Part shown: in pieces, positions 8,812 to 25,550 of the stretch
Numbering within the stretch: the first letter of the stretch is position 1
Layout: every line of letters begins with the position of its first letter
Virus record (IMG/VR): IMGVR_UViG_3300025869_002060
Span: 1-64,000 of that record
Length of the DNA stretch: 64,000 nucleotides
Strand: one strand, 5' to 3'
Notes under the pieces: generated by a model
What the model was told of the DNA's origin: nothing
Databases searched by the model: none
Seen by the model: only the letters and a program-made list of their open reading frames with translations
Translations under genes and position numbers: made by a program

Positions 8812-8840
8812 TTGACAATACTAATAATAAATAGTATATT
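8812..8840 (+). promoter_or_regulatory. sigma70-like promoter (overlaps a TAAATA box)
   Basis: TTGACA-N17-TATATT. Confidence 0.65.
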
Positions 8841-8870
8841 ACAAGCATACTAACAGAAAGAATAGAGAAC

Positions 8871-8936: not shown

Positions 8937-8958
8937 CTTTGTGATCAAAGTTATTAAT

Positions 8959-8992
8959 AAAAGCCCCTAGCATTAAGTTAGGGGCTTTTTTT
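8959..8992 (+). terminator. intrinsic terminator / attenuator hairpin abutting tRNA-Trp
   Basis: AAGCCCCTA-loop-TAGGGGCTT followed by a T-tract ending 1 nt before the tRNA. Confidence 0.8.
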
Positions 8993-9066
8993 GTGGGTGT
9001 AGTGTAATGGCAACACGGCTGATTCCAAACCAGCAAACGGGGGTTCGATTCCCTCCACCTATGCCA
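8993..9066 (+). tRNA. tRNA-Trp(CCA)
   Basis: Cloverleaf; anticodon loop TTCCAAA centred on CCA (A31-C39 mismatch); G73 discriminator; encoded CCA. Confidence 0.85.
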
Positions 9067-9068
9067 AT

Positions 9069-9167
9069 TTATCGAGCAAATTGTTGTTTACTGAGTAATG
9101 TATTGATAATGTTTTTACGGTGCTGTCTAATTAGTTTTAGATAGCAAAATAAATGAAATGTATTCAT
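9069..9167 (-). CDS. riboswitch-controlled small basic peptide (32 aa, MNTFHLFCYLKLIRQHRKNIINTLLSKQQFAR)
   Basis: AAGGAGG SD 7 nt upstream of ATG; lies directly downstream of the tandem aptamers. Confidence 0.7.
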   Translation of the reverse strand: MNTFHLFCYLKLIRQHRKNIINTLLSKQQFAR

Positions 9168-9196
9168 TTCTCACCCTCCTTGGTTAAAAGTTAGGT

Positions 9197-9245
9197 GCGT
9201 TCCTTCGGTTTCATTACCTACTTCCGTCTCTTGCGAGATGAACGA
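9197..9245 (-). ncRNA. glutamine riboswitch aptamer (glnA-type), proximal copy
   Basis: Reverse complement CGTTCA-TCTC GCAA GAGA-CGGAAGTA-GGT AATGAA ACC-GAAG-GAACGC: P1 CGUU/AACG, P2 with GNRA loop, GGAAGUA/GAAG junction, P3. Confidence 0.8.
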
Positions 9246-9252
9246 TGATAAT

Positions 9253-9299
9253 GCGTTCCTTCGGCTTAATTGCCTACTTCCGCCCATTTGGGTGAACGT
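9253..9299 (-). ncRNA. glutamine riboswitch aptamer (glnA-type), distal copy
   Basis: Reverse complement CGTTCA-CCC AAAT GGG-CGGAAGTA-GGC AATTAA GCC-GAAG-GAACGC; P2 and P3 covary relative to the proximal copy. Confidence 0.8.
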
Positions 9300-9330
9300 T
9301 GTTTAGCATACGTATTTACCATAATATTGG

Positions 9331-9359
9331 TTGACTTATTGCTAATTTAGTACTATAGT
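9331..9359 (+). promoter_or_regulatory. sigma70-like promoter
   Basis: TTGACT-N17-TATAGT, divergent from the riboswitch transcript. Confidence 0.65.
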
Positions 9360-9399
9360 ATGTATATAGTAAAAAGAGTTATGTGAAGGAGTTTTATGT

Positions 9400-9621
9400 T
9401 TGTTTGAAATGGATGCATTTTCACATGCCGTGATCGCTGTAGTTTGTTTATTTATAGCATGGTATGTTGGTAGAAATTGGGGCCGGAAAAGTTTAGCAGA
9501 AGCTGTCATTGAAACAACTCTAGATAACTTAGAACGCTCTGGGTACATATGTACCGAAACTGGTAGGAATGGTGAGAAAGAACTAATTCCTATCTCAGAA
9601 ATTTTAGCAAATAAGGAATAG
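9400..9621 (+). CDS. small membrane protein
   Basis: N-terminal TM helix; AGGAG SD upstream. Confidence 0.6.
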   Translation: MFEMDAFSHAVIAVVCLFIAWYVGRNWGRKSLAEAVIETTLDNLERSGYICTETGRNGEKELIPISEILANKE

Positions 9622-9752
9622 CAAAATGGTTACAGTTGTCACTATTTTTGGATATATTGTACTAGCTAATTTTGTTGCATCTGGCGTAATGATGGCCATT
9701 GGCAATTAATTTTAACGGTATTCTTAATAAGGTATATAAAGAGTATTAGAAT

Positions 9753-9856
9753 TCGGAAGGTGGTATTGCTTGGGTCGCTACTAGGCAAGAGAACAGGTTT
9801 GGTGATAGAACATCAGTCTTAAGTATCCATTGATGAAACAGTGGAACACCTTCCGG
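9753..9856 (+). ncRNA. candidate structured ncRNA (unassigned)
   Basis: Perfect 9-bp closing stem CGGAAGGTG/CACCTTCCG enclosing three hairpins; ends 8 nt before tRNA-Ala. Confidence 0.55.
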
Positions 9857-9864
9857 CAAAGTTT

Positions 9865-9940
9865 GGGGCCGTAGCTCAGTTGGGAGAGCGATGCCTTTGC
9901 AAGGCATAGGTCGTCGGTTCGATCCCGTCCGGCTCCACCA
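9865..9940 (+). tRNA. tRNA-Ala(TGC)
   Basis: GGGGCCG acceptor with G3:U70, loop TTTGCAA, encoded CCA. Confidence 0.95.
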
Positions 9941-9941
9941 T

Positions 9942-10015
9942 GCGGGTGTCGTATAATGGTATTACCTGAGATTTCCAATCTCATGACAGGAGTTCGATTC
10001 TCCTCACCCGCTCCA
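9942..10015 (+). tRNA. tRNA-Gly(TCC)
   Basis: GCGGGTG/CACCCGC, TGAGA-TTTCCAA-TCTCA, U73, encoded CCA. Confidence 0.95.
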
Positions 10016-10035
10016 ACCAATCCGTAACGGAATGT

Positions 10036-10112
10036 GCGCCTGTAGCTCAGCTGGATAGAGCATTTGACTACGAATCAAAAGGCCAGGAGTTCGAATCTCT
10101 TCAGGCGCACCA
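10036..10112 (+). tRNA. tRNA-Arg(ACG)
   Basis: GCGCCTG/CAGGCGC, TTTGA-CTACGAA-TCAAA, encoded CCA. Confidence 0.95.
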
Positions 10113-12653: not shown

Positions 12654-13268
12654 ATGTTAGCAAACCTATTAGACGGAGTCAACAGAGCTTTGGTTACTAA
12701 GTTGGTAATTTTACATACCTTAGTAATTGCTGTCTCAAACTACCTAGTAACAATTAGATTTGATTTATTTCCCGGGGCAGAATTGCCACTATTTGGATCA
12801 TTTCCACTCGCGGCCGCGGCGTTCACATTTCCGATCGTTGTTGTTGCAACTGATTTGACTGTACGGTTAATTGGTAAACAAGCAGGAAGAGCCGTTGTGG
12901 CTATGGCCATTATTCCAGCTATTGTGGCGTCGGTGCTAGTGCTATTAGCACTTGGTGACGAACACGCCTACAGAGTTGGACTTGCAAGTGGCACAGCCTA
13001 TGCAATTGGAACAATGCTTGATGTATATGTATTCCAACACATTCGTGAAAAGTATACCGAAATGTGGTGGGCGGCACCAGCAATTTCTACAGTTGTTGCC
13101 AATATCATCGACACCTATGCATTCTTCTATACAGCGTTCTATCCGGCACCTTGGGTACACGGCGTAGCGTTCAATAATACACTTACTAAAATTGTAGTAG
13201 GTCTTATTGTATTCTTACCAGCATACGGTATGTTATTATCGTATCTTAGGAATAGAGTTAAGTCTTAA
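12654..13268 (+). CDS. yhhQ: queuosine precursor transporter (YhhQ/Vut family)
   Basis: SNYLV, AFTFP...ATDL, G...D..VF, STVVANIIDT..F motifs; multi-TM; AAGGAG SD. Confidence 0.8.
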   Translation: MLANLLDGVNRALVTKLVILHTLVIAVSNYLVTIRFDLFPGAELPLFGSFPLAAAAFTFPIVVVATDLTVRLIGKQAGRAVVAMAIIPAIVASVLVLLALGDEHAYRVGLASGTAYAIGTMLDVYVFQHIREKYTEMWWAAPAISTVVANIIDTYAFFYTAFYPAPWVHGVAFNNTLTKIVVGLIVFLPAYGMLLSYLRNRVKS

Positions 13269-13339
13269 CCACAAGGACGAAACCACTAAACCTCACCTAA
13301 TATAAAAATATATTAGGCCCAATAAAACGGTTATTGGAC

Positions 13340-13369
13340 AAAAAAGCAGAAGGAGACTTCTGCTTTTTT
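13340..13369. terminator. bidirectional intrinsic terminator
   Basis: AAAAAAGCAGAAG-GAGA-CTTCTGCTTTTTT. Confidence 0.75.
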
Positions 13370-13423
13370 CTTGACTTTAAAAAATATCAATGTTATTGTA
13401 AATATAACATTAGAAGGAATAAT

Positions 13424-13735
13424 ATGACAGAAGAATATAAAAAACTAGATGAGAAGATCAAAGAGTTGAACAGTACACGAGTCTATAAAAAAATTACTCC
13501 CAAAGGAGATTTGAGCTGGTATATTAAATGGTCATCTTCGGTTGTGATCCTATTGGCTGTAATGTGTCGCAGTGTTCCGGACGTTCCAAAAATATTTGAT
13601 CTAGTATTGTCATTTCATGGCTGTGCCGGTTGGCTAGTTGTTGGAATGCTTTGGCATGATAGAGCATTGATTTGTTTAAACGGTGTTTTGCTTTTTGTAC
13701 TTGGAAGTGGAATATTAACCTATATAGCCAGGTAA
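13424..13735 (+). CDS. small membrane protein
   Basis: Start at ATG 13424; three hydrophobic segments, WYIKW and WHDRAL motifs. Confidence 0.65.
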   Translation: MTEEYKKLDEKIKELNSTRVYKKITPKGDLSWYIKWSSSVVILLAVMCRSVPDVPKIFDLVLSFHGCAGWLVVGMLWHDRALICLNGVLLFVLGSGILTYIAR

Positions 13736-13742
13736 TTACAAA

Positions 13743-14189
13743 ATGAAAGATAAATTTAAAAAACTTTATATTGACTGGGCAAGACGAGTTGCAGAACTTA
13801 GTCATGCCAAACGACTTCAAGTTGGCGCAGTGATTGTAAAAGATGATACTGTTATCAGTTACGGTTATAACGGTATGCCTAGTGGATGGAATAACGAATG
13901 CGAAGATTTAGTTTTCTTTAAAGATAAAAAACAGCTTACCCAGCCTCTATTAAAAACTAAACCAGAAGTGCTACATGCCGAATCAAATGCAATAGCAAAA
14001 TTAGCTAAATCAAATAATAGTGGGTTAGATGCTGATATCTTTATTACACACAGTCCTTGTGGTGAATGTGCTAAACTAATACTACAAGCCGGTATACGTA
14101 CTGTTTATTATGCTGAGAATTATCGTGATGATACAGGAATAAAATTTCTAAAGAAATCTAAAATCTCGGTTCAGCTACTCGATAAATAA
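13743..14189 (+). CDS. dCMP/deoxycytidylate deaminase
   Basis: HAE...PCxxC zinc motif, GYNG, VGAVIV. Confidence 0.9.
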   Translation: MKDKFKKLYIDWARRVAELSHAKRLQVGAVIVKDDTVISYGYNGMPSGWNNECEDLVFFKDKKQLTQPLLKTKPEVLHAESNAIAKLAKSNNSGLDADIFITHSPCGECAKLILQAGIRTVYYAENYRDDTGIKFLKKSKISVQLLDK

Positions 14190-14234: not shown

Positions 14235-15083
14235 ATGGGCGTTAAAACTCTAACCTTCCATAATAAGTTGTTAACACTGGTTTATAGTTGTCAAGTTATA
14301 GGCATTGCCGGACTGATATACTACTGGGATCCTATCTACTTGTTATGGACCGCACTTGGTAAACTACTTTTTTATAGCTTTGGCGTAGAAATTGGTTTAC
14401 ACCGTTATCTATCACATCGTAGTTTTTCCATGGCCAAATGGAAAGAAAGAATACTCTTGGTATTGAGTATGTTTGCTTGTTATGGAAGTACACTTGGATG
14501 GTGTGCTAATCATAGAGTTCATCATACCAATGCTGATAAAACAAAAGGTGATCCACACCCTAGTAAGCAATGGTTTAAAACATGGTTTTGGATTAATACA
14601 GAAAAGAATGTTACAATAAGTCCAACAGTAATTAAAGATCTACTCAAAGATCCATTCCATAAATGGATGAGAGAAAATTACTTTAGAGTAGTAGTTGGTA
14701 CAATAGTTCTAAGTGCATTGATATTTGGTCCAAAGTTTGCTATATACTTCTTTGTAGTTCCAGCGGCACTTGCCCAACTTAGCGGCGGATTAATAAATGT
14801 AATTTGTCATAAATGGGGATATCGCTCATATGAAACTACCGATCTAAGCAAGAATAATTTTCTAGTTAATGCATATGCATTGTTTGTGGGTGTTGGATTA
14901 CATAACAACCATCATAAATTTCCTTGGGAACATAAAACACTAACAAAAGGAAAACGCATTTGGCATGAAGTGGATTGGGGCGGATGGTTTATTGAAAAAT
15001 TCTTGTTAGAAAGTAATGGCACAGATTGGGGGAAACGCTCTGGGCCATCAACAAAACAAACAAGTAAAATGTTAATGGAGTAA
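14235..15083 (+). CDS. membrane fatty-acid desaturase (delta-9-like) #1
   Basis: Three His boxes: HRYLSH, HRVHH, HNNHH; TM segments. Confidence 0.9.
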   Translation: MGVKTLTFHNKLLTLVYSCQVIGIAGLIYYWDPIYLLWTALGKLLFYSFGVEIGLHRYLSHRSFSMAKWKERILLVLSMFACYGSTLGWCANHRVHHTNADKTKGDPHPSKQWFKTWFWINTEKNVTISPTVIKDLLKDPFHKWMRENYFRVVVGTIVLSALIFGPKFAIYFFVVPAALAQLSGGLINVICHKWGYRSYETTDLSKNNFLVNAYALFVGVGLHNNHHKFPWEHKTLTKGKRIWHEVDWGGWFIEKFLLESNGTDWGKRSGPSTKQTSKMLME

Positions 15084-15085
15084 GA

Positions 15086-15916
15086 ATGGAACAGATAAGC
15101 AGTAAGTGGTTAGCCAGCTATCTTGGAGGGATTACTGGTGTATTTGGTAGTTTTGTAGTTTTTTGTGCAGACTATCATCATTGGGATTGGTATTTAATAA
15201 GTTTTTTGTGGTGGGTTATTGCATGTAGATTGATTATGCAAACAGTTGGACTACACAAATATTGGGCACACAATAGTTTTGACACTGGACCAATCCGTGA
15301 ATGGATTTTAACATGGGGTTGTATACTATGTGGTACTGGTAGTCCATATAACTGGGCAGTGCATCACAGACATCACCATAAACACACTGACACAGACAAA
15401 GATATTCATAGTCCTAATACTAATACTTTTACACAGTCGTTTTTTATAACATGGATGTTTAAACCAGACAAATGGTGGAGAGATAAGAAAATTTCACTAA
15501 AGCATAAAGATTTGCTGTCTAACAAAAAGGTCATGCATATACACAAGTATTATCATCATTATTGGTTTGCATTGATAATTGCAACATTGATAATTGATTG
15601 GCGTATAACACTATTCTTTGTACTTCAACCAGTTGGTTTGAATATGCTGATGTCTGGAATAAACAACCATTTAAGTCATACAGATATAGTTCCAAAATCA
15701 TACAGGAATTATGAATCAAAAGATAATAGTCATAATTTACCAGGCTGGACCAATTTACTGTTATTAGGCGAAGGATATCATCATAATCATCATCACGCAC
15801 CATGGAAGTACGACAACGCAGACAAGCCAGGAGAGTGGGATTTAAGCGGCTGGGTTATTCGTACGTTCTTTGATATACACCGCGGTAAACTAGGAAGCGA
15901 TTACAAGAGGTATTAG
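15086..15916 (+). CDS. membrane fatty-acid desaturase #2
   Basis: HKYWAH, HHRHHH, GEGYHHNHH. Confidence 0.9.
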   Translation: MEQISSKWLASYLGGITGVFGSFVVFCADYHHWDWYLISFLWWVIACRLIMQTVGLHKYWAHNSFDTGPIREWILTWGCILCGTGSPYNWAVHHRHHHKHTDTDKDIHSPNTNTFTQSFFITWMFKPDKWWRDKKISLKHKDLLSNKKVMHIHKYYHHYWFALIIATLIIDWRITLFFVLQPVGLNMLMSGINNHLSHTDIVPKSYRNYESKDNSHNLPGWTNLLLLGEGYHHNHHHAPWKYDNADKPGEWDLSGWVIRTFFDIHRGKLGSDYKRY

Positions 15917-15917
15917 A

Positions 15918-16730
15918 ATGCAATGGAAGTTAACATATTTTACGGGCTACATTGGTGCAATACTAGGTTTAGTATACACTGTCCAGGCTGACATTTGGCC
16001 TTTGTATGTAGCTAGTATAATATATTGGCTTCTCTTTTGTAGACTTATTTGTCAACTAATAGGATTACATAAGTATTGGACACACAGAAGTTTTTCAACA
16101 GGTCCAATACGCCATTTTATACTAGCATTTGGAAGTATACTATGTGGCACTGGTAGTCCGTACACATGGGCAGTGCATCACAGACATCATCATAAACATG
16201 CTGATACAGAAAAAGATGTACACAGTCCAACACAGAATGGTTGGTTAAGCACAATACTAGGTTACTGGGTATTGAATCCAACAGAATGGTGGTATGACAA
16301 AGGAATACAAGTAACACATAGAGACCTAGTTAAAGACAAACAGGTAATGCATGTTCACAAACATTACTGGAAATACTGGTATGCCTTATTAGTTATTACA
16401 ACATTAATAGATTGGCGTATTGCTTTGCTATTTGTAATTCAACCAATTGGGCTAAGTTTATTTGTACATGGGTGCAATAATTTGTTTAGTCACACAACCA
16501 AGTTTCCAAAATCATATAGGAATTATGATTTACCTGACAACAGTAGAAATTTACCAATCTGGACAAACCTAATGTTACTAGGAGAAGGGTATCACAACAA
16601 TCACCATAACAAACCTTGGGCATATGATAATGCAGACAAGCCAGGAGAATGGGATTTCAGTGCATTGGTAATTAAGTATGTATTTGATATTCATCGCGGT
16701 AAACGTGGCTATGAATATAATAAAATTTAA
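15918..16730 (+). CDS. membrane fatty-acid desaturase #3
   Basis: HKYWTH, HHRHHH, GEGYHNNHH; close paralog of #2. Confidence 0.9.
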   Translation: MQWKLTYFTGYIGAILGLVYTVQADIWPLYVASIIYWLLFCRLICQLIGLHKYWTHRSFSTGPIRHFILAFGSILCGTGSPYTWAVHHRHHHKHADTEKDVHSPTQNGWLSTILGYWVLNPTEWWYDKGIQVTHRDLVKDKQVMHVHKHYWKYWYALLVITTLIDWRIALLFVIQPIGLSLFVHGCNNLFSHTTKFPKSYRNYDLPDNSRNLPIWTNLMLLGEGYHNNHHNKPWAYDNADKPGEWDFSALVIKYVFDIHRGKRGYEYNKI

Positions 16731-16742
16731 TAGGAGAATAAT

Positions 16743-17513
16743 ATGAATCCATATAATCAGACACTTTGGGTAGTATGGGGTAACCATCTACTAACAATTG
16801 GAGCAATACTATTCTTTTTTGAATGGTGGATGATTCCAGTTGCCTTTCTATCAGGGCATTTGTTTAGTGTGTTCAGTGAAATAGGAATTCACAGATATTT
16901 TACACACAAAGCATTTACAGTTGAGTCCAGATGGAAAGAGCAGTTAATGAAAGTGTTTGCTTTTTTAACAGGACAAGGAGCAATACTAAGTTGGGTGACA
17001 GTGCATAGGCATCATCATGTTTACGAAGACCAAGAAGGTGATCCTCATAGTCCTAAGATATTTCCATATTGGAAGATCTATTTAGGCTTGTTTCCAAAAA
17101 CCTACAAATCAAATTTGGTAATGGATTTAATCAGGCACAAAGATAGAAGATATTTTGTATTTGAAAACAAATACTATTGGTTGATGTGGACTGCTCTATG
17201 GTTAGGAAGTTTTGCAATTAGTCCATATCTATTCTTTGTAATTGTTAGTGGCAGTGCAATGTGGTATGCTTTTACTAGTGTAGTTAATATATTTTTACAT
17301 GATGAAGTAGTTGGCCATAAACCACACCAAGAACATGTAGCCACCAATAGTGGATGGTTGAACTGGTTAACTGGTGTTGGTTATCACAACAATCATCACA
17401 AGAATCCTAGAAGCTATACATACAACCTAGATGGAAAAGATCGAGACTGGATTGGTGCTATTATTAAATACGTTATAGCAGACAAAGTAGAAGTTGAACA
17501 ACAGAAAGCGTGA
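16743..17513 (+). CDS. membrane fatty-acid desaturase #4
   Basis: HRYFTH, HRHHH, GYHNNHH; AGGAGA SD. Confidence 0.9.
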   Translation: MNPYNQTLWVVWGNHLLTIGAILFFFEWWMIPVAFLSGHLFSVFSEIGIHRYFTHKAFTVESRWKEQLMKVFAFLTGQGAILSWVTVHRHHHVYEDQEGDPHSPKIFPYWKIYLGLFPKTYKSNLVMDLIRHKDRRYFVFENKYYWLMWTALWLGSFAISPYLFFVIVSGSAMWYAFTSVVNIFLHDEVVGHKPHQEHVATNSGWLNWLTGVGYHNNHHKNPRSYTYNLDGKDRDWIGAIIKYVIADKVEVEQQKA

Positions 17514-17520
17514 GTACAAT

Positions 17521-18375
17521 ATGAAAATAGATCCAGACAAGTTTAAGCCAAGTTGGACCGGGCATAAAATTAAAGCATTGATTGTTATGGCACACCTAGC
17601 ATTCATTGGCTATTGTTTTTCAGCAGAATTTAATTGGTTGTTTGTACTCATTGGTGGACCTTTGTTATGGTTCTTTATTTCTAAGATGGGCATGGAAGTT
17701 GGTTTTCATAGATTGTTTTGCCATAAATCATTTTCAACTACACAATGGAAAGCAAGAATGCTACTGATACTTGGTACAATTTCAAGTGTAGGTAGCAGTC
17801 TAACTTGGGTAGCTACACACCGAGTACATCATAAACATGCAGATCATTTAGGTGATCCACAAAACAGTCGTAGAGATAACTCATGGTGGAAAAATTGGTT
17901 AACACTTTGGGACGACAATTGGAAATCCGAGCCGCTTATTATTAAAGATTTAATGCGTGATAAATGGCATCGTTATATACACAAACACTATTTTAAATTG
18001 GTACTTGGTTATATCTCCACACTGGGCGTTATAAGCCTGGCAGTATCTAGTTGGTATCCTATTGTTGTATTGTGGGCTTTTCCTGTTATACTAAATTTCA
18101 ATCTAGCAGGATTTTTAAATTCTCTATTTCATAACAACATAAATGGTTGGGGATTTTATAGAAATTATACTTCTGATGATGATAGCAGAAACCATGCAGT
18201 ACTAAATCTTCTTATGGCAGGTGCTGGAATGCACAACAATCATCATGGGGCTCCTGCTAGTTATACCTATAATACCAATAACAAATGGTATGAAATAGAC
18301 CCAACTGCAAAGTTTGTTAAGAAATTTTTAGCCACTGAAATTACACTACCAGACGGATCTAAAGAAAAAGTATAA
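17521..18375 (+). CDS. membrane fatty-acid desaturase #5
   Basis: HRLFCH, HRVHH, GMHNNHH; start at ATG 17521. Confidence 0.9.
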   Translation: MKIDPDKFKPSWTGHKIKALIVMAHLAFIGYCFSAEFNWLFVLIGGPLLWFFISKMGMEVGFHRLFCHKSFSTTQWKARMLLILGTISSVGSSLTWVATHRVHHKHADHLGDPQNSRRDNSWWKNWLTLWDDNWKSEPLIIKDLMRDKWHRYIHKHYFKLVLGYISTLGVISLAVSSWYPIVVLWAFPVILNFNLAGFLNSLFHNNINGWGFYRNYTSDDDSRNHAVLNLLMAGAGMHNNHHGAPASYTYNTNNKWYEIDPTAKFVKKFLATEITLPDGSKEKV

Positions 18376-18422
18376 ACGACTCAATCTATAATTACTAGTA
18401 TTAATCAACTTAGGAAATTTCA

Positions 18423-19121
18423 ATGACTGGTACATATAGAGCTGAACTAATACCCACGGCAGAAGTTCGCTCAAACAAAAACCTACAAAAAAAATTACTT
18501 TCTATTATTACAGGCCGCAATCGGTTAATGGGTGCGTCGGTCACTGATAACTCTCATGCTGTCAGAGAGTTTGCAGGACTATTGGTCGAAAAGACAAAGC
18601 AAGGTTTTGATTCTAGATTTCATACATGGGCATTAGCATATCACAATGATGAAACTGATCCATGTGGATTCTTTGTATGTGGTAGTATTCATGATTTACC
18701 AATTTGGACAATACAAAGTGTGAGTTTTGCCAATGCACAAAAAAGAAATGATTGGTCAAAAGGACATCCTTTTGTAACAACTCTTGATGCACTTGGTGAC
18801 AAGATGATCTCTGACAGAGTATATGATTTATTGTGGATGAATCCTGATCGTCCAGCAATACGTAAACAATGGAAAAGTGGTTTTGACATGATGCGTTACT
18901 GTCCAAGTTTTTACGATTCAGAAAAACAGCAATATAAATGGCATAGGTATATTGAAGGAGTAGTCAAACAAGGCGAAACTCATCCTATTGAACAGTACCA
19001 TAAACAAATACTACAAGATAGACCAGCACTGGTTGATGTTGCAATTAGACATTTTGTTTTAAAAAATGAATACAGACAAGAATGGAATGCAGTGTCCGAC
19101 TGGTGGCCCAATAATGACTAA
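18423..19121 (+). CDS. hypothetical protein
   Basis: 232-aa soluble ORF between the desaturase array and the TRAP operon. Confidence 0.65.
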   Translation: MTGTYRAELIPTAEVRSNKNLQKKLLSIITGRNRLMGASVTDNSHAVREFAGLLVEKTKQGFDSRFHTWALAYHNDETDPCGFFVCGSIHDLPIWTIQSVSFANAQKRNDWSKGHPFVTTLDALGDKMISDRVYDLLWMNPDRPAIRKQWKSGFDMMRYCPSFYDSEKQQYKWHRYIEGVVKQGETHPIEQYHKQILQDRPALVDVAIRHFVLKNEYRQEWNAVSDWWPNND

Positions 19122-19569
19122 GTTAGTTAATTACTATAGCTGGTTTGTTCTAGCAATGGTATTACTAATTGTTACCAATGTATTAGGTCGTTACTTCTTT
19201 GATCTTAGATTTGATTTTGCAGTCGACGTGAGTTGGCAGTTGTATGGAATAATGATTATAATGGGTTGTAGTCATGCATTATCAACAGACTCGCATATAA
19301 GAACTGACGTATACTGGAACAAATTCAGTGATAAAGTTAAAGCTCGTATTGATTTTGTAAGTTATCTAATTTTATTTTTTCCTGCTATCAGTATACTCAC
19401 ATACAAAAGTATTTTTGATACTATAAGAAGTGTAGCACAAAACGAAACAAGCAGTGCAACAATGGCTCAACTCATAGTATGGCCATTGAAGATAGGAATT
19501 ACATTAGGATTAATATTATTACTGTATCAAGGTGCAGTAAACACAAGAAAGTGTTTTAAAAGATGTTAG
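19114..19569 (+). CDS. dctQ: TRAP transporter small permease
   Basis: Four TM helices; VLGRYFF, HIRTD motifs. Confidence 0.85.
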   Translation: MTKLVNYYSWFVLAMVLLIVTNVLGRYFFDLRFDFAVDVSWQLYGIMIIMGCSHALSTDSHIRTDVYWNKFSDKVKARIDFVSYLILFFPAISILTYKSIFDTIRSVAQNETSSATMAQLIVWPLKIGITLGLILLLYQGAVNTRKCFKRC

Positions 19570-20942
19570 CCATTGTAATGTTAGTGGCAATGATTGCCGG
19601 CATATTTGTAGGTGTTCCAGTAGCATTTACTCTCTTATTTTTAGCACTAGGTTTTGGCTACATCACAATGGGAGAAAATGTATTTGATTTAGCCTATTAT
19701 AATTTAATAGGTGGGCTTAGTGACGAAGTGTTCATGGCAATACCAATGTTTATATTCATGGGTTATGTTGCTGAACGGGCAGGTTTGGTAGAAGGATTGT
19801 TTGACAGTCTTAAACGTATGCTAAGTGGAATCAAAGGAAGTTTGTACTATGTTGTTATTGTAATTGCTATTCTTATCAGTCTGGCTACAGGTGTAGTTGG
19901 TGCCAGTGTGACCTTACTGGGTATTATGGCCGCGCCGCACATGATGCGGTTGGGTTACGATCACAAATTAAGTGCTGGTGTAATTGCCGCCGGAGGATCA
20001 ATGATTATTATTCCTCCAAGTGTTCCTTTAATTGTTATGGCACCAACAATGAATGTTAGTATTGTTGATCTATATGCGGCTGTAATGGGTCCAGGATTGA
20101 TGATTGCTTTTATGTTTATGGTTTATTGTGCCTATCAAGTTAGACGATATCCTGAACTAGCACCAGCAACAGAACATGAACCTGTTCCGTGGACCTTGTA
20201 TACTAGATTAATACTTGATGTTTTTCCATTGGCTTTCTTAATAGCAGTTACATTAGGCAGTATGTTATTTGGACTAGCAACCAGTACAGAAGCAGGATCA
20301 TTTGGAGCCGCAGGTGCTCTAATACTTGCTCTTGCCAATAGAAGTTTAACCTGGGAAAGATTGCAAGAGGCTATGTTAAAAACAACAAGCACAAGTGCCG
20401 TTGTTATGTTACTTGCTATAGCCTCAACTATTTTTGGTGCAGTTTTTACAGGATTGGGCGGGGACAATATTATTGTTGATGCTCTTAATAGTTTACCAAT
20501 ACCAACTTGGGCACTGGTAGGCACAATACTTGTATTGTGTCATATACTAGGCTGGCCGTTTGAATGGCCTGTAGTGGTACTGGTTTTTTTACCGATGTTT
20601 ATGCCCATCCTGGTAAATAACAACGTCGACATGTTGTGGTTTGGAGCCGCACTAGGGATAGTGATACAAACGGCCTACCTAACTCCTCCTGTTGCACTTA
20701 CATCATATTATTTAAAACAAGTTGTTCCTTCCTGGGATTTAACTATGATATTTAAATCTATGATGCCTTTTATGTGGATTCAAGTTTTAGCAGTCTGCAT
20801 ATTATTCCTAACCCCTAGTATCGCCACCTGGTTTCCAAAATATTTGGACCATCAGAGGCAGGTACTAAATAATTCTGTTACAGGAGAGAAACCTGTAGGA
20901 GAAATAGATTTCTTATCAAAGAGCAAGTCAAAATCAAATTAA
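19563..20942 (+). CDS. dctM: TRAP transporter large permease
   Basis: AIPMFIFMG, IIPPS(V)PLIV, YLTPPV motifs; about 12 TM. Confidence 0.92.
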   Translation: MLAIVMLVAMIAGIFVGVPVAFTLLFLALGFGYITMGENVFDLAYYNLIGGLSDEVFMAIPMFIFMGYVAERAGLVEGLFDSLKRMLSGIKGSLYYVVIVIAILISLATGVVGASVTLLGIMAAPHMMRLGYDHKLSAGVIAAGGSMIIIPPSVPLIVMAPTMNVSIVDLYAAVMGPGLMIAFMFMVYCAYQVRRYPELAPATEHEPVPWTLYTRLILDVFPLAFLIAVTLGSMLFGLATSTEAGSFGAAGALILALANRSLTWERLQEAMLKTTSTSAVVMLLAIASTIFGAVFTGLGGDNIIVDALNSLPIPTWALVGTILVLCHILGWPFEWPVVVLVFLPMFMPILVNNNVDMLWFGAALGIVIQTAYLTPPVALTSYYLKQVVPSWDLTMIFKSMMPFMWIQVLAVCILFLTPSIATWFPKYLDHQRQVLNNSVTGEKPVGEIDFLSKSKSKSN

Positions 20943-20956
20943 AGGAGATATTTTGG

Positions 20957-22048
20957 ATGAAAAAGACTTTAGTAGGAAGTATTGTAGCTGGTGCATTAGC
21001 TTTGTTTTCAACAGGCGTACTAGCAGATGATACAAAAACTTTAAAAATTGCAAGTTCCTACCCAGCAGTAAGCACACTTACTGATCAAGCAACTTTTATT
21101 GCAGATCGTGTTAAGACACTTACTGAAGGAAAGGTAATTATGGAATTTAAACCAGCTGGCGCATTAGTTCCAGCATTCCAAGTACTTGATGCAACAGCAT
21201 CTGGTGCGGCTGACGGAGCATGGACTCAGTCATATTACTGGGTTGGTAAAGATAAAACTTTATCGTTATTCAACTCACCCTTAGGTGGACCATACGGTAT
21301 GGACGGTATGGATTTCTTAGGCTGGATGTTCCACGGTGGCGGACTTGATCTATACAGAACTTTCTACAAGGATGTTTTAAAATTAGATGTTGTTCCTTTT
21401 CCAGTTATGCCAGCACAGAATCAGCCATTAGGTTGGTTTCATCGCCCAATTAAAGATCTAGCAGATCTAAAAAACTTTAAATGTCGTCAAACAGGTATTA
21501 ACGTAGAACTGTATGCTCGTATGGGTATGCAGACTATTGGTATGCCAGGTGGTGAGATTGCCGCCGCAGGGCGTAAAGGTGTTATTAATTGTGCAGAATT
21601 TGTTGGTGGTTTAGAAGATCAACGCATGGGCTTCAGCAAAATTTGGAAGTATTACTATCTAAACAGTTTGCATGAGCATTCAAACACAGGCGATTTACTA
21701 CTCAATGGTAAAGTATGGCGTAGCCTTTCAAAGCAACAGCAGACAGCAATTCGTTCTGCCGCTTATGAATCATATCTATGGTGGATGACTGACATGCAAG
21801 GTAAAAACGGTCAAGCACTAGCAGAAATGATTGAACAAGATGGAGTTAAAGTTATGAAAACTCCAGCAGATATCATTGAAGCAGAGTTAAAGACTATTGA
21901 TGCTATGTTAGCTGAAGAGAGTGCAAAGAACCCTTGGTTTGCTAAAGTACTTGCTTCACAAAAAGCATGGGCAAAGAAAGTTGTACCATTTAAGAACGTT
22001 GCGTTTACACCTTATAACTATGCCGCAGATTACTACTGGGGCAATTAA
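20957..22048 (+). CDS. dctP: TRAP substrate-binding protein (DctP/TakP-like)
   Basis: Signal peptide; PAGALVPAFQVLDA, YYWVGK, QPLGWF motifs; AAGGAG SD. Confidence 0.9.
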   Translation: MKKTLVGSIVAGALALFSTGVLADDTKTLKIASSYPAVSTLTDQATFIADRVKTLTEGKVIMEFKPAGALVPAFQVLDATASGAADGAWTQSYYWVGKDKTLSLFNSPLGGPYGMDGMDFLGWMFHGGGLDLYRTFYKDVLKLDVVPFPVMPAQNQPLGWFHRPIKDLADLKNFKCRQTGINVELYARMGMQTIGMPGGEIAAAGRKGVINCAEFVGGLEDQRMGFSKIWKYYYLNSLHEHSNTGDLLLNGKVWRSLSKQQQTAIRSAAYESYLWWMTDMQGKNGQALAEMIEQDGVKVMKTPADIIEAELKTIDAMLAEESAKNPWFAKVLASQKAWAKKVVPFKNVAFTPYNYAADYYWGN

Positions 22049-22073
22049 GTTTTAAACAAAACTAAGTTATTAG

Positions 22074-22099
22074 AAAAGGGCCGTTGGCCCTTTTCTTTT
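22074..22099 (+). terminator. intrinsic terminator
   Basis: AAAAGGGCC-GTT-GGCCCTTTTCTTTT. Confidence 0.75.
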
Positions 22100-22261
22100 G
22101 ACTGAATTTTCTCACGTATAAATAGTGTTAGCAACGCCCATTAGTGGACGTCGGATACCTTGGACGCTTTGGTAATCATAAACCATTTATCTAGTTGACT
22201 AGTAACGCCCTTCCGTGTATAGTGTGAGAGTACTATTAGCATTAACTTTTAGGTATCACGC

Positions 22262-23443
22262 ATGTTCACATCTCTTCAGCACCCTGACCGATATGGTTAT
22301 TATCAAATTGGTAATCGACGTACTTACAGTAAACTAGAGTTCGTTGATTATCTTAATCAATATCCTGCAGACTGGCATTGGGATTACAACGATGCATTCT
22401 TTAGCAGTTTTGATTGGGCAACAGAACCCGCAGAAGATATCAACACACTATATCGTAAGCGAGCAGAAGCACTACGAGAACAATACGATTACGTTGTTCT
22501 CTTCTATTCGGGTGGATACGACAGTTCGAATATGCTATATGCATTTTTGGATAACGGAATTCCTATAGATGAAATCTGTACGTACTATGCAAGTCAGGAT
22601 ACATTCACAGGACAAAAAATAGAACTTGATAATTTTACCTGGCAGAAACTAGATGCCATTGAAAAGAAATATCCCAATATAAAGATCACACGTTGGGATT
22701 ACGGAGATGAATTTTTTAATTGGTCTGACAAAATTAAACAAGCAGGCGCCGGCGCTAACATGGTAGAAATGATAGCAGGAGGACTGATTTCTATTAACCG
22801 TATTGTATTAGATTTTGGTCATGAATATGTTCCACACTGGAAGAAGTTGCTCATGCAAGGCAAAAAGGTTGCATGGGTACACGGTGCAGATAAACCTATG
22901 TTGCGATATCACAACGATACGTGGAAATTTAACTTTCATGATGGAATAATCAATGGTCGATTAACTCCAGTACGGCAAATACTTGATCAAGGTGATATTG
23001 GAAATATTGAATTATTCTATTGGGCTCCCGATGCGACTTGTGCAAATATTATTATCAAACAATGTCATTTACTTAAAAATTATTACACCCCACAAGCAAA
23101 GATAGACTTTTCTAAAATACCAGGTGTTAAAAAGCATAATATTGAATATGGTTGGGAAATAGATAATATCTCACTTGACTTTGTTAAACAACTATATCCA
23201 AGACTATTCTCTGGTAACTTGATTTTACCAAATGAAAATTGGTCAACGATTAAAAGTGCCCGCAGTATGTTTGGCAACAGAGATCATTGGTTCACACAAT
23301 TAAACCATCATGCAGTAGATGAGTTTCATCGAATGTGGAAAGGAGCAAATAGCTCAATACATTCTCATTGGCATGATTGGTTCCACAACGGCACTATCGA
23401 AAGCGGTATTCGTAGTTGCATTACACAAGATTATATTATATGA
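22262..23443 (+). CDS. PP-loop (N-type ATP pyrophosphatase superfamily) protein
   Basis: VLFYSGGYDS motif (SGGxDS). Confidence 0.6.
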   Translation: MFTSLQHPDRYGYYQIGNRRTYSKLEFVDYLNQYPADWHWDYNDAFFSSFDWATEPAEDINTLYRKRAEALREQYDYVVLFYSGGYDSSNMLYAFLDNGIPIDEICTYYASQDTFTGQKIELDNFTWQKLDAIEKKYPNIKITRWDYGDEFFNWSDKIKQAGAGANMVEMIAGGLISINRIVLDFGHEYVPHWKKLLMQGKKVAWVHGADKPMLRYHNDTWKFNFHDGIINGRLTPVRQILDQGDIGNIELFYWAPDATCANIIIKQCHLLKNYYTPQAKIDFSKIPGVKKHNIEYGWEIDNISLDFVKQLYPRLFSGNLILPNENWSTIKSARSMFGNRDHWFTQLNHHAVDEFHRMWKGANSSIHSHWHDWFHNGTIESGIRSCITQDYII

Positions 23444-24708
23444 TTGAAGTTGTAATTGCATTAGCGGCCGGAATATGTGCAGGTGTGTTTGCTGGGTTAA
23501 TACCCGGTGTTCCAATTATGATGGGCTTTATGCTTTTCTTGCCAATGGTCAGTGCTGATGCATTTTGTTTAAGTTTGTATGGAGTGGTAATGACTCTTGG
23601 TACACAGTTCTTTGGTAGCCAAGCAGTATTGTATTATCGTATTCCTGGGGAAACCAGCAGTTTCCCCACATTAATTGAAAGCAAAAACTTTACAACACCT
23701 GAACAACTACGTCATACTATACAAGTGACAACCTGGGGCAGTCTTGTTGCAACTATAATTGCATTGTTGCTATTATCGTTGGCTCTTACAAGTGGTGCAT
23801 TAGATTGGGTCAAGCTCAGCATTGAATTTAGAGGTCTTGTGTTTGCATTGCTTATTGGTATGTGTATATTTGGTAATGGTCATGCATTGGCAAATATTGT
23901 TATTCTTGGTCTAGCAAGTTTCTTTGCATTCTACGAAGACATTGCTCCGCTAACAGGATTTATGCCTACCTACTACTTTAGCAGTATGTTGTCTCTTATT
24001 ATTATCTTCGCAATGCAGTTGGTATGGAATAGTTCTGACAGGTTTAAAACATACTCAGTTGGAACACATTCAACGTTTAAACTACGCGAGTGGTTGCCTT
24101 TTTATGCAAAATATGGATCTCTTGGAACCGTGTTTGGACTGGTACCACAACTAGGTGCTACCTTTAGCAGTTATCTTACTTACTCGTGGTTAAAGAAGAA
24201 TAATGCCAGTCCGACACACAGAGTTGCCGGAGCAGAAACAGCGAATAACGGAGCAATAGTATTTCAATGGTTTCCGTTGTTTTTGTTTGGTATTCCAATT
24301 ACAGGCAGTGAGATAATGCTAGTATCTCATTTTAATCAATTAGGACTTGATTTTAGTTTTCTTAAAGACTGGACTCAAGTTGCATGGCTTGCAGGATTGA
24401 TCGCACTAGCAGGATTAATCTACACTAGAATTTGCTTAACGACGAATCAATTACTTTATAAAGTGGTTGGAAGAGCATTGAGCTCACGTTACCTCACAAT
24501 CGCTATTGCGTTTGGAAGCATGTACTTATTTTATTGGGTTGGTAATTACACTGCTAAGTTTATGTTAATCCATTTAATGATTTTCATTCCGGTCAGTTGG
24601 ATAGTAGCTAAATTAAAAGTAAACCTATTAGCAGTTACTATTGGAATGATATTGATGAGTGAGATACTTCTTACTTTTTATCAACTGTTACAAATTCACA
24701 TTCTATAA
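23440..24708 (+). CDS. tripartite tricarboxylate transporter TctA-like permease
   Basis: G..AGLIPG, IPGETSS, VAGAETANNGA, GIP motifs; multi-TM. Confidence 0.75.
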   Translation: MIEVVIALAAGICAGVFAGLIPGVPIMMGFMLFLPMVSADAFCLSLYGVVMTLGTQFFGSQAVLYYRIPGETSSFPTLIESKNFTTPEQLRHTIQVTTWGSLVATIIALLLLSLALTSGALDWVKLSIEFRGLVFALLIGMCIFGNGHALANIVILGLASFFAFYEDIAPLTGFMPTYYFSSMLSLIIIFAMQLVWNSSDRFKTYSVGTHSTFKLREWLPFYAKYGSLGTVFGLVPQLGATFSSYLTYSWLKKNNASPTHRVAGAETANNGAIVFQWFPLFLFGIPITGSEIMLVSHFNQLGLDFSFLKDWTQVAWLAGLIALAGLIYTRICLTTNQLLYKVVGRALSSRYLTIAIAFGSMYLFYWVGNYTAKFMLIHLMIFIPVSWIVAKLKVNLLAVTIGMILMSEILLTFYQLLQIHIL

Positions 24709-24719: not shown

Positions 24720-25550
24720 GTGAAAAAATTACTAATTGCCGCAACGATGTTGTGTTTGCCGTTTACAGCAAATGCCGCAGATATTATTCCTACTGCAAAC
24801 CTCAAAGGTCCACAAGGAAAAATAGTACAGAATATTATTGCTAATTCTGTAACAACAAAGTTTGTAGCAAAGCAAACAGGTGGATGTGGAGAAGCCGTAG
24901 CAACATTTGAATCTGCTACAGGTCCTGTTGCTATTATATGGAGTAACTCCATGTACAGGAATAGCAAGAAGGCAAACCAAAATTGTATTATCAAACACGA
25001 TGAAGCCAGATCTGTTATGCAGGCTCGTGTACCATACGACATTTGTGTTACAAAAGGAGTCAACCTAGTTAAAGGCACTGACATGGCTTTTGGCAATAAC
25101 AAGTTTAATCCACAAATTGACCAACTTGAAGATCTTAACACAAACGGATTGGGTATTGAGTTTAGAACTGTTACATATAGAGGCAGTGGCCCAGTAGCCG
25201 CCGCAGTTGGCAATGGAGATGTTAATATTGGAATTATTGCAACTCCAAGTGCAAAGAAAGCAATTGAAGCAGGAAGTATTCAATGCTTGTATTCAACAGG
25301 ATCAGACCGTTACGGTCAACTGCCAATGTCAGAGTTTGTTCCTGGTACAAAACTTGCTAACTACAATCTTGGTATGATGGTGTTTACTCGTAACATGAGC
25401 AAAGCAGATCACGCCGCATTGGTTTCAGAACTTGAGCCACTCGAAGAAGCTCTAGTAATGCAAGACATGTTTGATGTCAAAGTTGATCTCGAAGATGCAG
25501 ATACTAAAGCATTTATTGAAGAAGCAAAGAGCTTAGAAAACACTAACTAA
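24720..25550 (+). CDS. TctC/Bug-like periplasmic substrate-binding protein (divergent)
   Basis: Signal peptide; VTYRGSGPVAAAVGNGDV resembles the Bug/TctC 'PYKGGGPA..DL.GG.V' segment; adjacent to TctA. Confidence 0.6.
   Translation: MKKLLIAATMLCLPFTANAADIIPTANLKGPQGKIVQNIIANSVTTKFVAKQTGGCGEAVATFESATGPVAIIWSNSMYRNSKKANQNCIIKHDEARSVMQARVPYDICVTKGVNLVKGTDMAFGNNKFNPQIDQLEDLNTNGLGIEFRTVTYRGSGPVAAAVGNGDVNIGIIATPSAKKAIEAGSIQCLYSTGSDRYGQLPMSEFVPGTKLANYNLGMMVFTRNMSKADHAALVSELEPLEEALVMQDMFDVKVDLEDADTKAFIEEAKSLENTN

What the first reader, a model, noticed from the sequence alone, without database searches (positions are those of the whole stretch)
19114..22048. Complete three-component TRAP transporter (dctQ-dctM-dctP) carried by a phage
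Seen: intact, translationally coupled dctQ/dctM plus dctP with a signal peptide and its own terminator. Known: TRAP systems import organic acids using an ion gradient; this DctP resembles the TakP/2-oxoacid-binding type. Phage transporter genes are usually lone binding proteins such as pstS, so a full importer is unusual. Inference: it boosts uptake of a carbon substrate (pyruvate or 2-oxoacids) during infection.
Basis: partly seen in the sequence, partly recalled or inferred. Interest (0 to 1): 0.68.

Follow-up and report, generated by a model that had tools for sequence, protein, structure and literature searches.

The report
Phage-borne TakP-type TRAP organic-acid importer
A marine jumbo phage really does carry a complete three-gene TRAP importer for small organic acids. 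The operon belongs to a lineage found so far only in uncultured ocean phages, which suggests these phages change what their hosts take up during infection.

Summary
dctQ (19114-19569), dctM (19563-20942) and dctP (20957-22048) are intact, full-length Pfam matches. dctQ and dctM overlap by 7 nt, dctP has an AGGAG ribosome site and a signal peptide, and a strong hairpin plus T-tract follows at 22074-22099.

The window is the first 64 kb of a 228 kb IMG/VR virus record (about 65% complete). The record carries tail-fibre genes and a DNA polymerase closest to those of 350-490 kb jumbo myoviruses. Four separate assemblies reproduce 12-21 kb around the operon at 99.92-99.995% identity, and GC3 matches the phage, so it is not a chimera.

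DctP is TakP-type. Its best sequence and fold matches are alpha-keto-acid receptors (7UG8, 2HZL), and the TakP ligand and cation residues are conserved.

New here: the operon belongs to a clade seen only in phage contexts. These are at least 9 different genomic positions in pelagimyophage-like T4 phages and jumbo phages. Identity within the clade is 64-81% for DctP; the best cellular relatives reach 54% or less. dN/dS is 0.07-0.10. No GenBank phage record, PHROG family or searched paper has it. Two metatranscriptomes hold identical contigs.

Substrate, transport, infection-time expression and host remain untested.

The parts
18423..19121 (+). ORF of 232 aa, no family match. Its stop overlaps the dctQ start by 8 nt, so it is probably co-transcribed with the operon.
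   Evidence: ORF list; no Pfam, NCBIfam or PHROG hit; sequence at the junction; one contig from an RNA library spans 18300-19232 without a difference.
19114..19569 (+). dctQ, the small membrane subunit (151 aa; the alternative start at 19066 gives 167 aa).
   Evidence: PF04290, profile 1-130 of 132, E 4e-18; four hydrophobic peaks; homologues are 137-158 aa.
19563..20942 (+). dctM, the large permease subunit (459 aa). It overlaps the end of dctQ by 7 nt.
   Evidence: PF06808, profile 1-412 of 413, E 1e-62. TIGR00786 scores 235 bits, below its curated cut-off of 268. About 12 hydrophobic segments. Overlap read directly.
20943..20947 (+). AGGAG ribosome-binding site, 9 nt upstream of the dctP ATG.
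   Evidence: Read directly from the sequence.
20957..22048 (+). dctP, a periplasmic solute-binding protein of the TakP type (363 aa).
   Evidence: PF03480, E 2e-30. PDB by sequence: 7UG8 E 7e-43, 2HZK (TakP) E 3e-41. Model pLDDT 84.6. Fold matches: 7UG8 TM 0.82/0.90, 2HZL TM 0.82/0.89. R177, Y94, Q156, E214 and E240 match the TakP ligand and cation residues.
20957..21025 (+). Predicted Sec signal peptide (residues 1-23), with cleavage after VLA.
   Evidence: A single N-terminal hydrophobic segment, residues 5-23. It is the low-confidence, unaligned N-terminus of the model. No dedicated predictor was available.
22074..22099 (+). Intrinsic terminator: a 9-bp stem, GTT loop and T-tract.
   Evidence: Sequence; hairpin at -16.8 kcal/mol. 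Variant strains change the loop and turn one G-C pair into G-U. RNA-library contigs end at 22115-22124; contigs cannot prove an RNA end.

Best explanation
This is a functional, phage-encoded tripartite ATP-independent periplasmic (TRAP) importer.

Proposed mechanism in an infected Gram-negative marine host:
- DctQ and DctM are inserted into the inner membrane as a heterodimer.
- DctP is exported by the Sec pathway.
- DctP captures a small alpha-keto or alpha-hydroxy monocarboxylate together with a cation (Na+ or Ca2+), as TakP does.
- DctP delivers the ligand to DctQM, which moves it inward using the ion gradient.

The operon sits at the end of a run of same-strand accessory genes: a Vut_1 transporter, a dCMP deaminase, five desaturases and an unknown ORF. 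It closes with its own terminator.

The operon belongs to a lineage of TRAP operons that circulates as a cassette among uncultured marine phages, both pelagimyophage-like T4 phages and jumbo phages. It was not picked up recently from a cell.

Shown here:
- gene integrity and subfamily;
- conserved binding residues;
- real phage context;
- a phage-only clade;
- purifying selection;
- presence in RNA libraries.

Inferred:
- the actual ligand;
- Na+ coupling;
- expression during infection;
- the benefit to the phage, whether extra carbon and energy or a specific precursor.
For: Identity:
- Full-length Pfam hits for all three subunits.
- NCBIfam TRAP_S1 above its cut-off.
- Sequence matches to alpha-keto-acid receptors 7UG8 and TakP at E 1e-41 to 1e-43.
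- Fold matches at TM 0.82-0.90 to 7UG8 (alpha-ketovalerate plus Ca), TakP (Na-pyruvate) and the lactate-plus-Ca receptor 2ZZV.
- TakP residues R177, Y100, Q156, E214 and E240 (PMC1839085) correspond to R177, Y94, Q156, E214 and E240 here. All are invariant in 22 relatives.
- Q-M complex prediction: weak support, score 0.60 against a best control of 0.00. Runs agree in at least 97% of contacts and the partner's pLDDT is at least 74.

Phage context:
- The record is a 228,348-bp IMG/VR virus, 65% complete.
- It has tail-fibre and virion proteins and a DNA polymerase 42-50% identical to Phosso, Atu_ph07 and other 350-490 kb myoviruses.
- The window holds helicases, RNR and 5 tRNAs.

Not a chimera:
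- Four assemblies from different samples match 12-21 kb around the operon at 99.92-99.995%, collinear.
- The identical DctP is indexed in 59 blocks of the collection, on contigs up to 320 kb.
- 16 runs from 14 studies hold at least half of the sampled words.
- GC3 of 0.275-0.296 lies inside the genome's 5-95% range.

Phage clade:
- Every DctP relative at 64-81% identity whose contig I inspected sits among phage genes. Neighbours include gp23, prohead protease, terminase, neck, gp15, gp32, gp59, UvsX/Y/W, PolB, PhoH and lysozyme.
- They form one side of a long branch with 100% SH-aLRT support against 90 cellular sequences.
- DctM shows the same gap: 58-97% identity, then 52% or less.
- The best matches among GTDB species representatives are 46-54% identical.

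Functional constraint:
- dN/dS is 0.07-0.10 in pairs where dS is 0.65-1.2.

Expression:
- Two metatranscriptome runs hold contigs covering 18300-22124. In one run, four contigs spanning 18300-21994 show no difference from the window.
Against: - No binding or transport measurement exists.
- W215 of TakP, which contacts the ligand, is F215 here, and the rest of the pocket was not analysed. The ligand may be another small carboxylate.
- RNA-library contigs can come from carried-over DNA. A silent control stretch could not be assessed, because the strain in that study diverges from the window downstream of about 22125.
- dctM and dctP score below the curated cut-offs of TIGR00786 and TIGR00787, so they are divergent members.
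- The complex prediction gives only weak support and may reflect memory of solved TRAP structures.
- Capsid and terminase genes were not found in this 65%-complete fragment.
- The host is unknown.
Confidence: 0.7

Rival explanations
1. The transporter works, but its role is not general carbon or energy supply. It imports a specific precursor for phage-encoded chemistry. Candidates are a substrate for the PP-loop (SGGxDS) ATPase paralogues, the 2OG-Fe(II) oxygenases or the radical-SAM enzymes that neighbour TRAP operons in these phages.
For: - A virus-restricted PP-loop family lies directly upstream of dctQ in L006 (5 copies), L009 and L010 (3 copies), L116 and L117. A distant member lies directly downstream of dctP in the window (22262-23443).
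- A 2OG-Fe(II) oxygenase precedes dctQ in L013.
- A radical-SAM gene precedes it in L034.
Against: - The neighbours differ between contexts. In L020 the neighbour is a DnaB-like helicase, in L033 an NMO/OTCase pair, and in the window the five desaturases and an unknown ORF lie upstream.
- The PP-loop family has no assigned function.
- Adjacency in phage accessory islands is weak evidence of a shared pathway.
Confidence: 0.2
2. The region is host DNA joined to phage DNA by misassembly, or the contig is a bacterial or plasmid fragment wrongly called viral.
For: - TRAP operons are typical of bacterial chromosomes.
- The record is an incomplete metagenomic contig in which no capsid or terminase gene was found.
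Against: - The same junctions appear in four assemblies from different samples at 99.92% identity or more over 12-21 kb.
- A DNA run covers 18300-23500 with overlapping contigs.
- Composition matches the phage.
- Phage genes lie on both sides.
- Every close relative inspected lies beside hallmark phage genes.
- No cellular sequence exceeds 54% identity.
Confidence: 0.02
3. The genes are carried but do not act as an importer for the phage. They could be a decaying passenger, or serve another purpose such as changing the cell envelope to block superinfection, or only the binding protein matters and it works with host membrane subunits.
For: - The same phage has two orphan DctP genes without adjacent dctQM.
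- A second DctP follows the operon in L033 and L117, so binding proteins may act with other membrane parts.
- One assembly of the 142-kb lineage has dctM split into two ORFs (L022).
Against: - All three genes are intact across many lineages.
- dN/dS is 0.04-0.09 for dctM as well as 0.08-0.10 for dctP.
- The Q-M overlap is conserved.
- The ligand and cation residues are invariant.
Confidence: 0.08

Closest known systems
TakP (RSP_0097-type) TRAP solute receptor of Rhodobacter sphaeroides, PDB 2HZK/2HZL, with its DctQM partners
   Same: - Same Pfam families.
- E 3e-41 over residues 3-355, and TM 0.82/0.89.
- The salt-bridge Arg177, Tyr100 and the cation ligands Gln156, Glu214 and Glu240 are all conserved.
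- The long C-terminal helical extension is present.
   Different: - About 29% identity only.
- Trp215 is Phe.
- Encoded by a phage.
- Dimerisation and ligand were not tested.
Synechococcus CC9311 solute receptor bound to alpha-ketovalerate and calcium, PDB 7UG8
   Same: - It is the best sequence match (E 7e-43) and the best fold match (TM 0.82/0.90).
- It comes from a marine organism.
- It binds a keto acid through a cation.
   Different: - 28% identity.
- It is cellular.
- The phage protein's own ligand and cation are unknown.
Transporter-type auxiliary genes of marine phages: pstS in cyanophages; lactate permease, PnuC and TctA listed for pelagimyophages (PMC7029224, Table S5)
   Same: - These are phage-borne uptake genes in T4-like marine phages.
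- The TRAP-carrying T4-like contigs have gp23 and TerL 67-75% identical to Pelagibacter phages Mosig and HTVC008M and to OM43 phage Melnitz.
   Different: - Those are single components or single-gene carriers. Here all three parts of a binding-protein-dependent secondary transporter are present.
- TRAP is not in that table.
- The isolates themselves have no DctM.
SAR11 DctPQM and TctCBA 'metaparalogues' in flexible genomic islands (PMC11796062)
   Same: TRAP and TTT systems occur together as variable accessory uptake genes in abundant marine heterotrophs. The phage likewise carries TRAP next to a TctA/TctC-like pair.
   Different: - No named SAR11 protein appeared among the close relatives.
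- The nearest cellular sequences found are 54% identical or less and come from Burkholderiales, Alphaproteobacteria and Rokubacteria MAGs.

Membership tests
TRAP transporter (DctPQM, TC 2.A.56) | Periplasmic DctP-family (PF03480) binding protein with an export signal | tested here: met
   PF03480 E 2e-30; NF037995 scores 55.5 against a cut-off of 50; N-terminal hydrophobic signal with a VLA|DD site.
TRAP transporter (DctPQM, TC 2.A.56) | Small DctQ subunit with four membrane helices | tested here: met
   PF04290 over 130 of 132 profile positions. Four hydropathy peaks, one weaker at 1.32.
TRAP transporter (DctPQM, TC 2.A.56) | Large DctM subunit with about twelve membrane helices | tested here: met
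   PF06808 over 412 of 413 profile positions; about 12 hydrophobic segments. Caveat: TIGR00786 scores 235 bits, below its curated 268.
TRAP transporter (DctPQM, TC 2.A.56) | Conserved arginine in the binding protein that pairs with the substrate's carboxylate | tested here: met
   R177 aligns with TakP Arg177 and is invariant in 22 relatives.
TRAP transporter (DctPQM, TC 2.A.56) | DctQ and DctM form a complex | tested here: inconclusive
   Weak support: score 0.60 against a best control of 0.00. Runs agree in at least 97% of contacts and the partner's pLDDT is at least 74. The mark was reached by 51 of 78 solved complexes and 2 of 108 mismatched pairs, but at 0.60 or under by only 5 of those 78 solved complexes and by all 4 mismatches that passed.
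TRAP transporter (DctPQM, TC 2.A.56) | Ion-gradient-driven, ATP-independent uptake that depends on the binding protein | not testable with these tools
   Needs uptake assays.
TakP-type (IPR025997 / COG4663) cation-dependent alpha-keto / alpha-hydroxy acid receptors | Cation-coordinating Gln156, Glu214 and Glu240, plus Tyr100 | tested here: met
   Q156, E214, E240 and Y94 are conserved and invariant in alignment A1. W215, whose main chain is the cation ligand, is F215.
TakP-type (IPR025997 / COG4663) cation-dependent alpha-keto / alpha-hydroxy acid receptors | Long C-terminal helical extension (the swapped helix of the TakP dimer) | tested here: met
   The alignment to 2HZK runs to residue 352 of 365. 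The model has helices 304-324 and 326-349. Dimerisation itself was not tested.
TakP-type (IPR025997 / COG4663) cation-dependent alpha-keto / alpha-hydroxy acid receptors | Binds 2-oxo acids | not testable with these tools
   Needs a ligand screen.
Phage auxiliary metabolic gene | Lies inside a real phage genome with phage genes on both sides, reproducibly | tested here: met
Phage auxiliary metabolic gene | Expressed during infection | tested here: inconclusive
   Identical contigs occur in two RNA libraries, but DNA carry-over is not excluded and contigs give no strand or level.

The most novel reading that the evidence does not exclude
Marine phages maintain their own lineage of TRAP transporters. 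It has long been separate from any sampled cellular lineage. It is shuffled as a cassette between pelagimyophage-like T4 phages and jumbo phages, and it is supplemented by orphan binding proteins and a divergent TctA/TctC pair. If so, infected cells of abundant ocean heterotrophs take up organic acids chosen by the phage rather than by the host.
Probability: 0.45. Interest if true: 0.75.

Novelty: new member of a known kind. Interest (0 to 1): 0.6.

Why it matters
Phage uptake genes described so far are mostly single parts, such as pstS, or single-gene carriers. A complete binding-protein-dependent secondary importer would be different. Here it is conserved under purifying selection across many uncultured ocean phages and is absent from reference phage collections. 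That would mean phages can install a whole high-affinity organic-acid uptake route in the host membrane.

The likely hosts are abundant streamlined heterotrophs, so such a route could change which dissolved organic carbon compounds infected cells consume.

It is also directly testable. The binding protein is small and soluble and has solved relatives, so a ligand screen could name the compound that these phages want.

Tried and rejected
- Nucleotide searches of GenBank phages with the operon (distant mode) and with 24 kb of the window (near mode) found nothing.
- Pfam terminase (PF03237) and gp23 (PF07068) searches of the 228-kb record were negative. The gp23 model also rang in no control genome, so that result says nothing. 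The record is only 65% complete.
- tblastn of DctM against 50,697 phage records gave only 23-27% matches, in short unannotated gut contigs and mislabelled Salmonella/E. coli records.
- Nine paper searches were run. None found a description of a phage TRAP operon. The pelagimyophage paper lists TctA, lactate permease and a desaturase but not TRAP. The search for 7UG8 found nothing relevant.
- The chimera hypothesis was rejected.
- I looked for a donor clade. The nearest cellular DctP and DctM are 46-54% identical and come from mixed Burkholderiales, Alphaproteobacteria and Rokubacteria MAGs on the far side of a long branch, so no donor can be named.
- DNA for the contig of P0125 (at least 90% identical DctP, in another genomic context) could not be fetched.
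- Silence of the stretch downstream of the terminator in RNA libraries could not be used as a control. The DNA contig of the same study also stops matching the window there.
- Complex prediction for Q-M gave weak support only: 0.60 against a best control of 0.00.
- The large representative-protein search was not used, because it carries no names or context and could not separate viral from cellular relatives.
- No alternative genetic code was used.
Full report
**What is at the coordinates**

Three same-strand ORFs occupy 19114-22048. Each matches its TRAP Pfam family almost end to end:
- DctQ PF04290, profile 1-130 of 132;
- DctM PF06808, profile 1-412 of 413;
- DctP PF03480, profile 4-279 of 286.

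NCBIfam agrees on the family but shows divergence. TRAP_S1 is above its cut-off (55.5 against 50). TIGR00786 (235 against 268) and TIGR00787 (24 against 175) are below theirs.

Gene junctions:
- The dctM ATG at 19563 lies within the last codons of dctQ, a 7-nt overlap.
- dctP follows 14 nt after the dctM stop, with AGGAG 9 nt before its ATG.
- The dctQ start is ambiguous between 19066 and 19114. Homologue lengths (137-158 aa) and the start of the Pfam match favour 19114, which overlaps the stop of the upstream ORF by 8 nt.

Hydropathy gives one N-terminal signal-like segment in DctP (MKKTLVGSIVAGALALFSTGVLA|DD), four peaks in DctQ and about twelve in DctM.

Twenty-six nucleotides after the dctP stop lies AAAAGGGCC-GTT-GGCCCTTTT, followed by CTTTT. 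The hairpin folds at -16.8 kcal/mol.

**Is the carrier a phage, and is the join real?**

The window is bases 1-64000 of a single 228,348-bp IMG/VR virus record. The record is classed linear and about 65% complete, with 37% GC.

Phage content of the window and record:
- The window holds a DnaB-like helicase, a DEAD-box helicase, a ribonucleotide reductase and five tRNA genes.
- The far end of the record has collagen-like tail-fibre and virion proteins.
- The DNA polymerase is 42-50% identical to those of Sinorhizobium phage Phosso, Agrobacterium phage Atu_ph07, Vibrio phage 2.275.O and the Yersinia, Serratia and Erwinia jumbo myoviruses of 350-490 kb.
- Terminase and major capsid genes were not found in this fragment.

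Evidence against a chimera:
- The identical DctP is indexed in 59 blocks of the assembly collection, on contigs up to 320 kb.
- Four loci from different samples align to the window at 99.92-99.995% over 12.6-21.0 kb without a gap. They carry the same gene order on both sides of the operon.
- Sixteen sequencing runs from 14 studies hold at least half of the sampled words.
- One independent DNA run covers all of 18300-23500 with overlapping contigs.
- GC3 of dctM and dctP (0.296, 0.275) lies inside the genome's 5-95% range of 0.20-0.32.

A host-derived chimera is excluded for practical purposes.

**What kind of TRAP system is it?**

By sequence, the best solved relatives of DctP are the Synechococcus CC9311 ketoacid receptor 7UG8 (E 7e-43) and TakP of Rhodobacter sphaeroides, 2HZK (E 3e-41, aligned over residues 3-355).

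An AlphaFold model built on 22 relatives has mean pLDDT 84.6. Its best fold matches are:
- 7UG8, bound to alpha-ketovalerate and calcium (TM 0.82/0.90);
- 2HZL, TakP bound to sodium-pyruvate (TM 0.82/0.89);
- 2ZZV, the Thermus receptor bound to lactate and calcium.

The TakP paper names the residues that hold sodium-pyruvate (PMC1839085): Arg177, Tyr100, Gln156, Glu214, the Trp215 main chain and Glu240. In the alignment these are R177, Y94, Q156, E214, F215 and E240 of the phage protein. Five are identical, and those five are invariant in the 22-sequence alignment. The C-terminal helical extension typical of TakP relatives is present.

The exact ligand is not determined.

A Q-M complex prediction gave weak support: score 0.60 against a best control of 0.00. 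Runs agreed in at least 97% of contacts and the partner's pLDDT was at least 74. Passes at 0.60 or under were reached by only 5 of 78 solved complexes and by all 4 mismatches that passed. This agrees with expectation but adds little.

**The wider picture: a phage-only clade**

A word search of 5.8 billion proteins found about 30 DctP clusters at 64-100% identity. Identity then drops to 55% or less for sequences named as cellular TRAP binding proteins. DctM shows the same step, 58-97% and then 52% or less.

I inspected the contigs of the close relatives. All are phage-like:
- Contigs of about 142 kb have dctQMP after PolB, a RecA/UvsX-like gene and a DnaB/gp41-like helicase.
- An NCBI metagenome contig has the operon near the prohead protease, scaffold and gp23, followed by UvsY and UvsW.
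- A Tara contig has it before gp59, gp32 and baseplate genes.
- IMG/VR contigs have it next to neck proteins, gp15 and the large terminase.
- Three further contexts, two of them with fetched DNA, lie beside PhoH, a lysozyme, DnaJ and ClpB. The two with DNA belong to distant relatives of this jumbo phage, whose core proteins are 40-65% identical.

Clustering of neighbouring genes gives at least nine different positions for the operon.

The T4-like carriers have gp23 and TerL 67-75% identical to Pelagibacter phages Mosig and HTVC008M and to OM43 phage Melnitz. Those isolates, and all 50,697 GenBank phage records, lack any close DctM. No PHROG family matches DctQ, DctM or DctP.

In a maximum-likelihood tree of 110 DctP sequences, the 20 I labelled as phage-context form one side of a branch with 100% SH-aLRT support. 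They lie about two substitutions per site from 90 cellular sequences. Of the seven unlabelled metagenomic proteins among those 20, the contexts of two (P0002, P0004) were checked afterwards; five remain unchecked. The best matches among 185,579 GTDB species representatives are 46-54% identical, in Burkholderiales, Alphaproteobacteria and Rokubacteria MAGs.

TRAP proteins are far more alike between this jumbo phage and the T4-like phages (72-78%) than their DNA polymerases are (30%). The cassette has therefore moved between phage lineages.

Pairs with unsaturated synonymous divergence give dN/dS of 0.07-0.10 for both dctP and dctM. The genes are kept working inside phage genomes.

**Expression**

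Two metatranscriptome runs of one study contain contigs matching 18300-22124. In one run, four contigs spanning 18300-21994 show no difference from the window. One of them bridges the unknown ORF and dctQ.

In both RNA runs the last contig ends at 22115-22124, just beyond the terminator. The strains differ there by loop changes and one G-C to G-U change, which keep the hairpin.

This fits transcription that ends at the terminator, with three caveats:
- Contigs cannot show RNA ends, strand or level.
- DNA may be present in RNA libraries.
- The DNA contig of the same study also ceases to match the window after about 22125-22318, so the silence downstream is uninformative.

**Mechanism and rivals**

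The most likely reading is a working importer. It would be installed in the infected cell's inner membrane and periplasm, and would bring in a small alpha-keto or alpha-hydroxy monocarboxylate with a cation.

Whether the gain is carbon and energy or a specific precursor is open. The precursor idea rests on a virus-restricted PP-loop (SGGxDS) paralogue family directly upstream of dctQ in five other contexts and directly downstream of dctP here, and on oxygenase and radical-SAM neighbours. The neighbours are not constant, so I rate it lower.

A passenger or non-transport role is unlikely given the selection on all subunits. Misassembly is rejected.

**Host**

The host is unknown. The clues are:
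- a marine source;
- low GC;
- polymerase relatives that infect Alphaproteobacteria;
- TRAP cassettes shared with relatives of SAR11 and OM43 phages;
- an accessory repertoire (TctA, desaturases, carbamoyltransferase) that overlaps the list for pelagimyophages.

These point to marine heterotrophic Proteobacteria and no further.

**Novelty and verdict**

The transporter is an ordinary member of a known family. What is new is its carrier and its evolutionary standing. I found no paper in the searchable library that describes a phage TRAP operon. A mention in an unsearched supplementary table cannot be excluded.

I file it as a new member of a known kind. Interest is moderate to high because it is widespread, conserved and easy to test.

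Noticed in passing
window 23416-24708 (probable ATG start at 23440) and 24720-25550: A TctA-like membrane protein (PF01970, profile 2-420 of 423) is followed by a TctC-like binding protein with a signal peptide (weak PF03401, E 1e-5). No TctB was seen. The TctA has only 16 relatives in 5.8 billion proteins, all unnamed. Identity falls from 94% to 40% across 11 of them and then to about 25%. This may be a second, highly divergent phage-borne tripartite transporter.
   Followed up: partly
window 14235-18375: Five tandem fatty-acid desaturase paralogues (PF00487, 256-293 aa) lie upstream of the TRAP operon, separated from it only by the unknown ORF at 18423-19121. The array is conserved in the independent assemblies.
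   Followed up: partly
window 22262-23443; G000 150566-151747, 152595-153782, 154756-155940; L006 3573-9558; L009 6039-9552; L116 7016-8146; L117 7143-8240: A virus-restricted family of PP-loop (SGGxDS) ATPase-like proteins occurs in tandem copies. It lies directly upstream of dctQ in five other phage contexts and directly downstream of dctP here. It has no Pfam hit. The protein atlas places it near viral QueC / Asn-synthase-like clusters.
   Followed up: partly
G000 102783-103790 (-) = L026:2783-3790; G000 182272-183300 (-) = L030:10272-11300: The same phage has two further DctP-family binding-protein genes with no adjacent dctQM. They are of the classical DctP type, not the TakP type. A second DctP also follows the operon in L033 and L117.
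   Followed up: partly
window 12654-14189: Three genes head the same-strand run that ends at the TRAP terminator: a Vut_1/YhhQ-type transporter (12654-13268), a DUF6552 protein (13334-13735, shared with the 142-kb T4-like lineage) and a dCMP deaminase (13743-14189).
   Followed up: no
window 8727-10112: A cluster of five tRNA genes: Thr-TGT, Trp-CCA, Ala-TGC, Gly-TCC and Arg-ACG.
   Followed up: no
G000 203022-211181 (-): Six tandem paralogues. The three scanned matched radical-SAM PHROG families, and the rest were assigned by clustering. A carbamoyltransferase lies nearby at 199004-200488.
   Followed up: no
L022 8638-9980; L017 7467-8165: In one assembly of the 142-kb lineage, dctM is split into ORFs of 360 and 96 aa. 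In one assembly of the window's own lineage, the unknown ORF upstream of dctQ is split into 81 and 133 aa, although the whole 14.5-kb locus differs from the window at only one base. These may be real inactivations or sequencing errors.
   Followed up: no
window 22098-22260: The 213-nt spacer after the terminator holds two promoter-like sites: TTGACT-N17-AATAGT and TTGACT-N17-TATAGT. The motif AACGCCC follows the first site and lies within the spacer of the second. This spacer is the most variable stretch between strains. The promoter scan as a whole is not enriched over shuffles.
   Followed up: no
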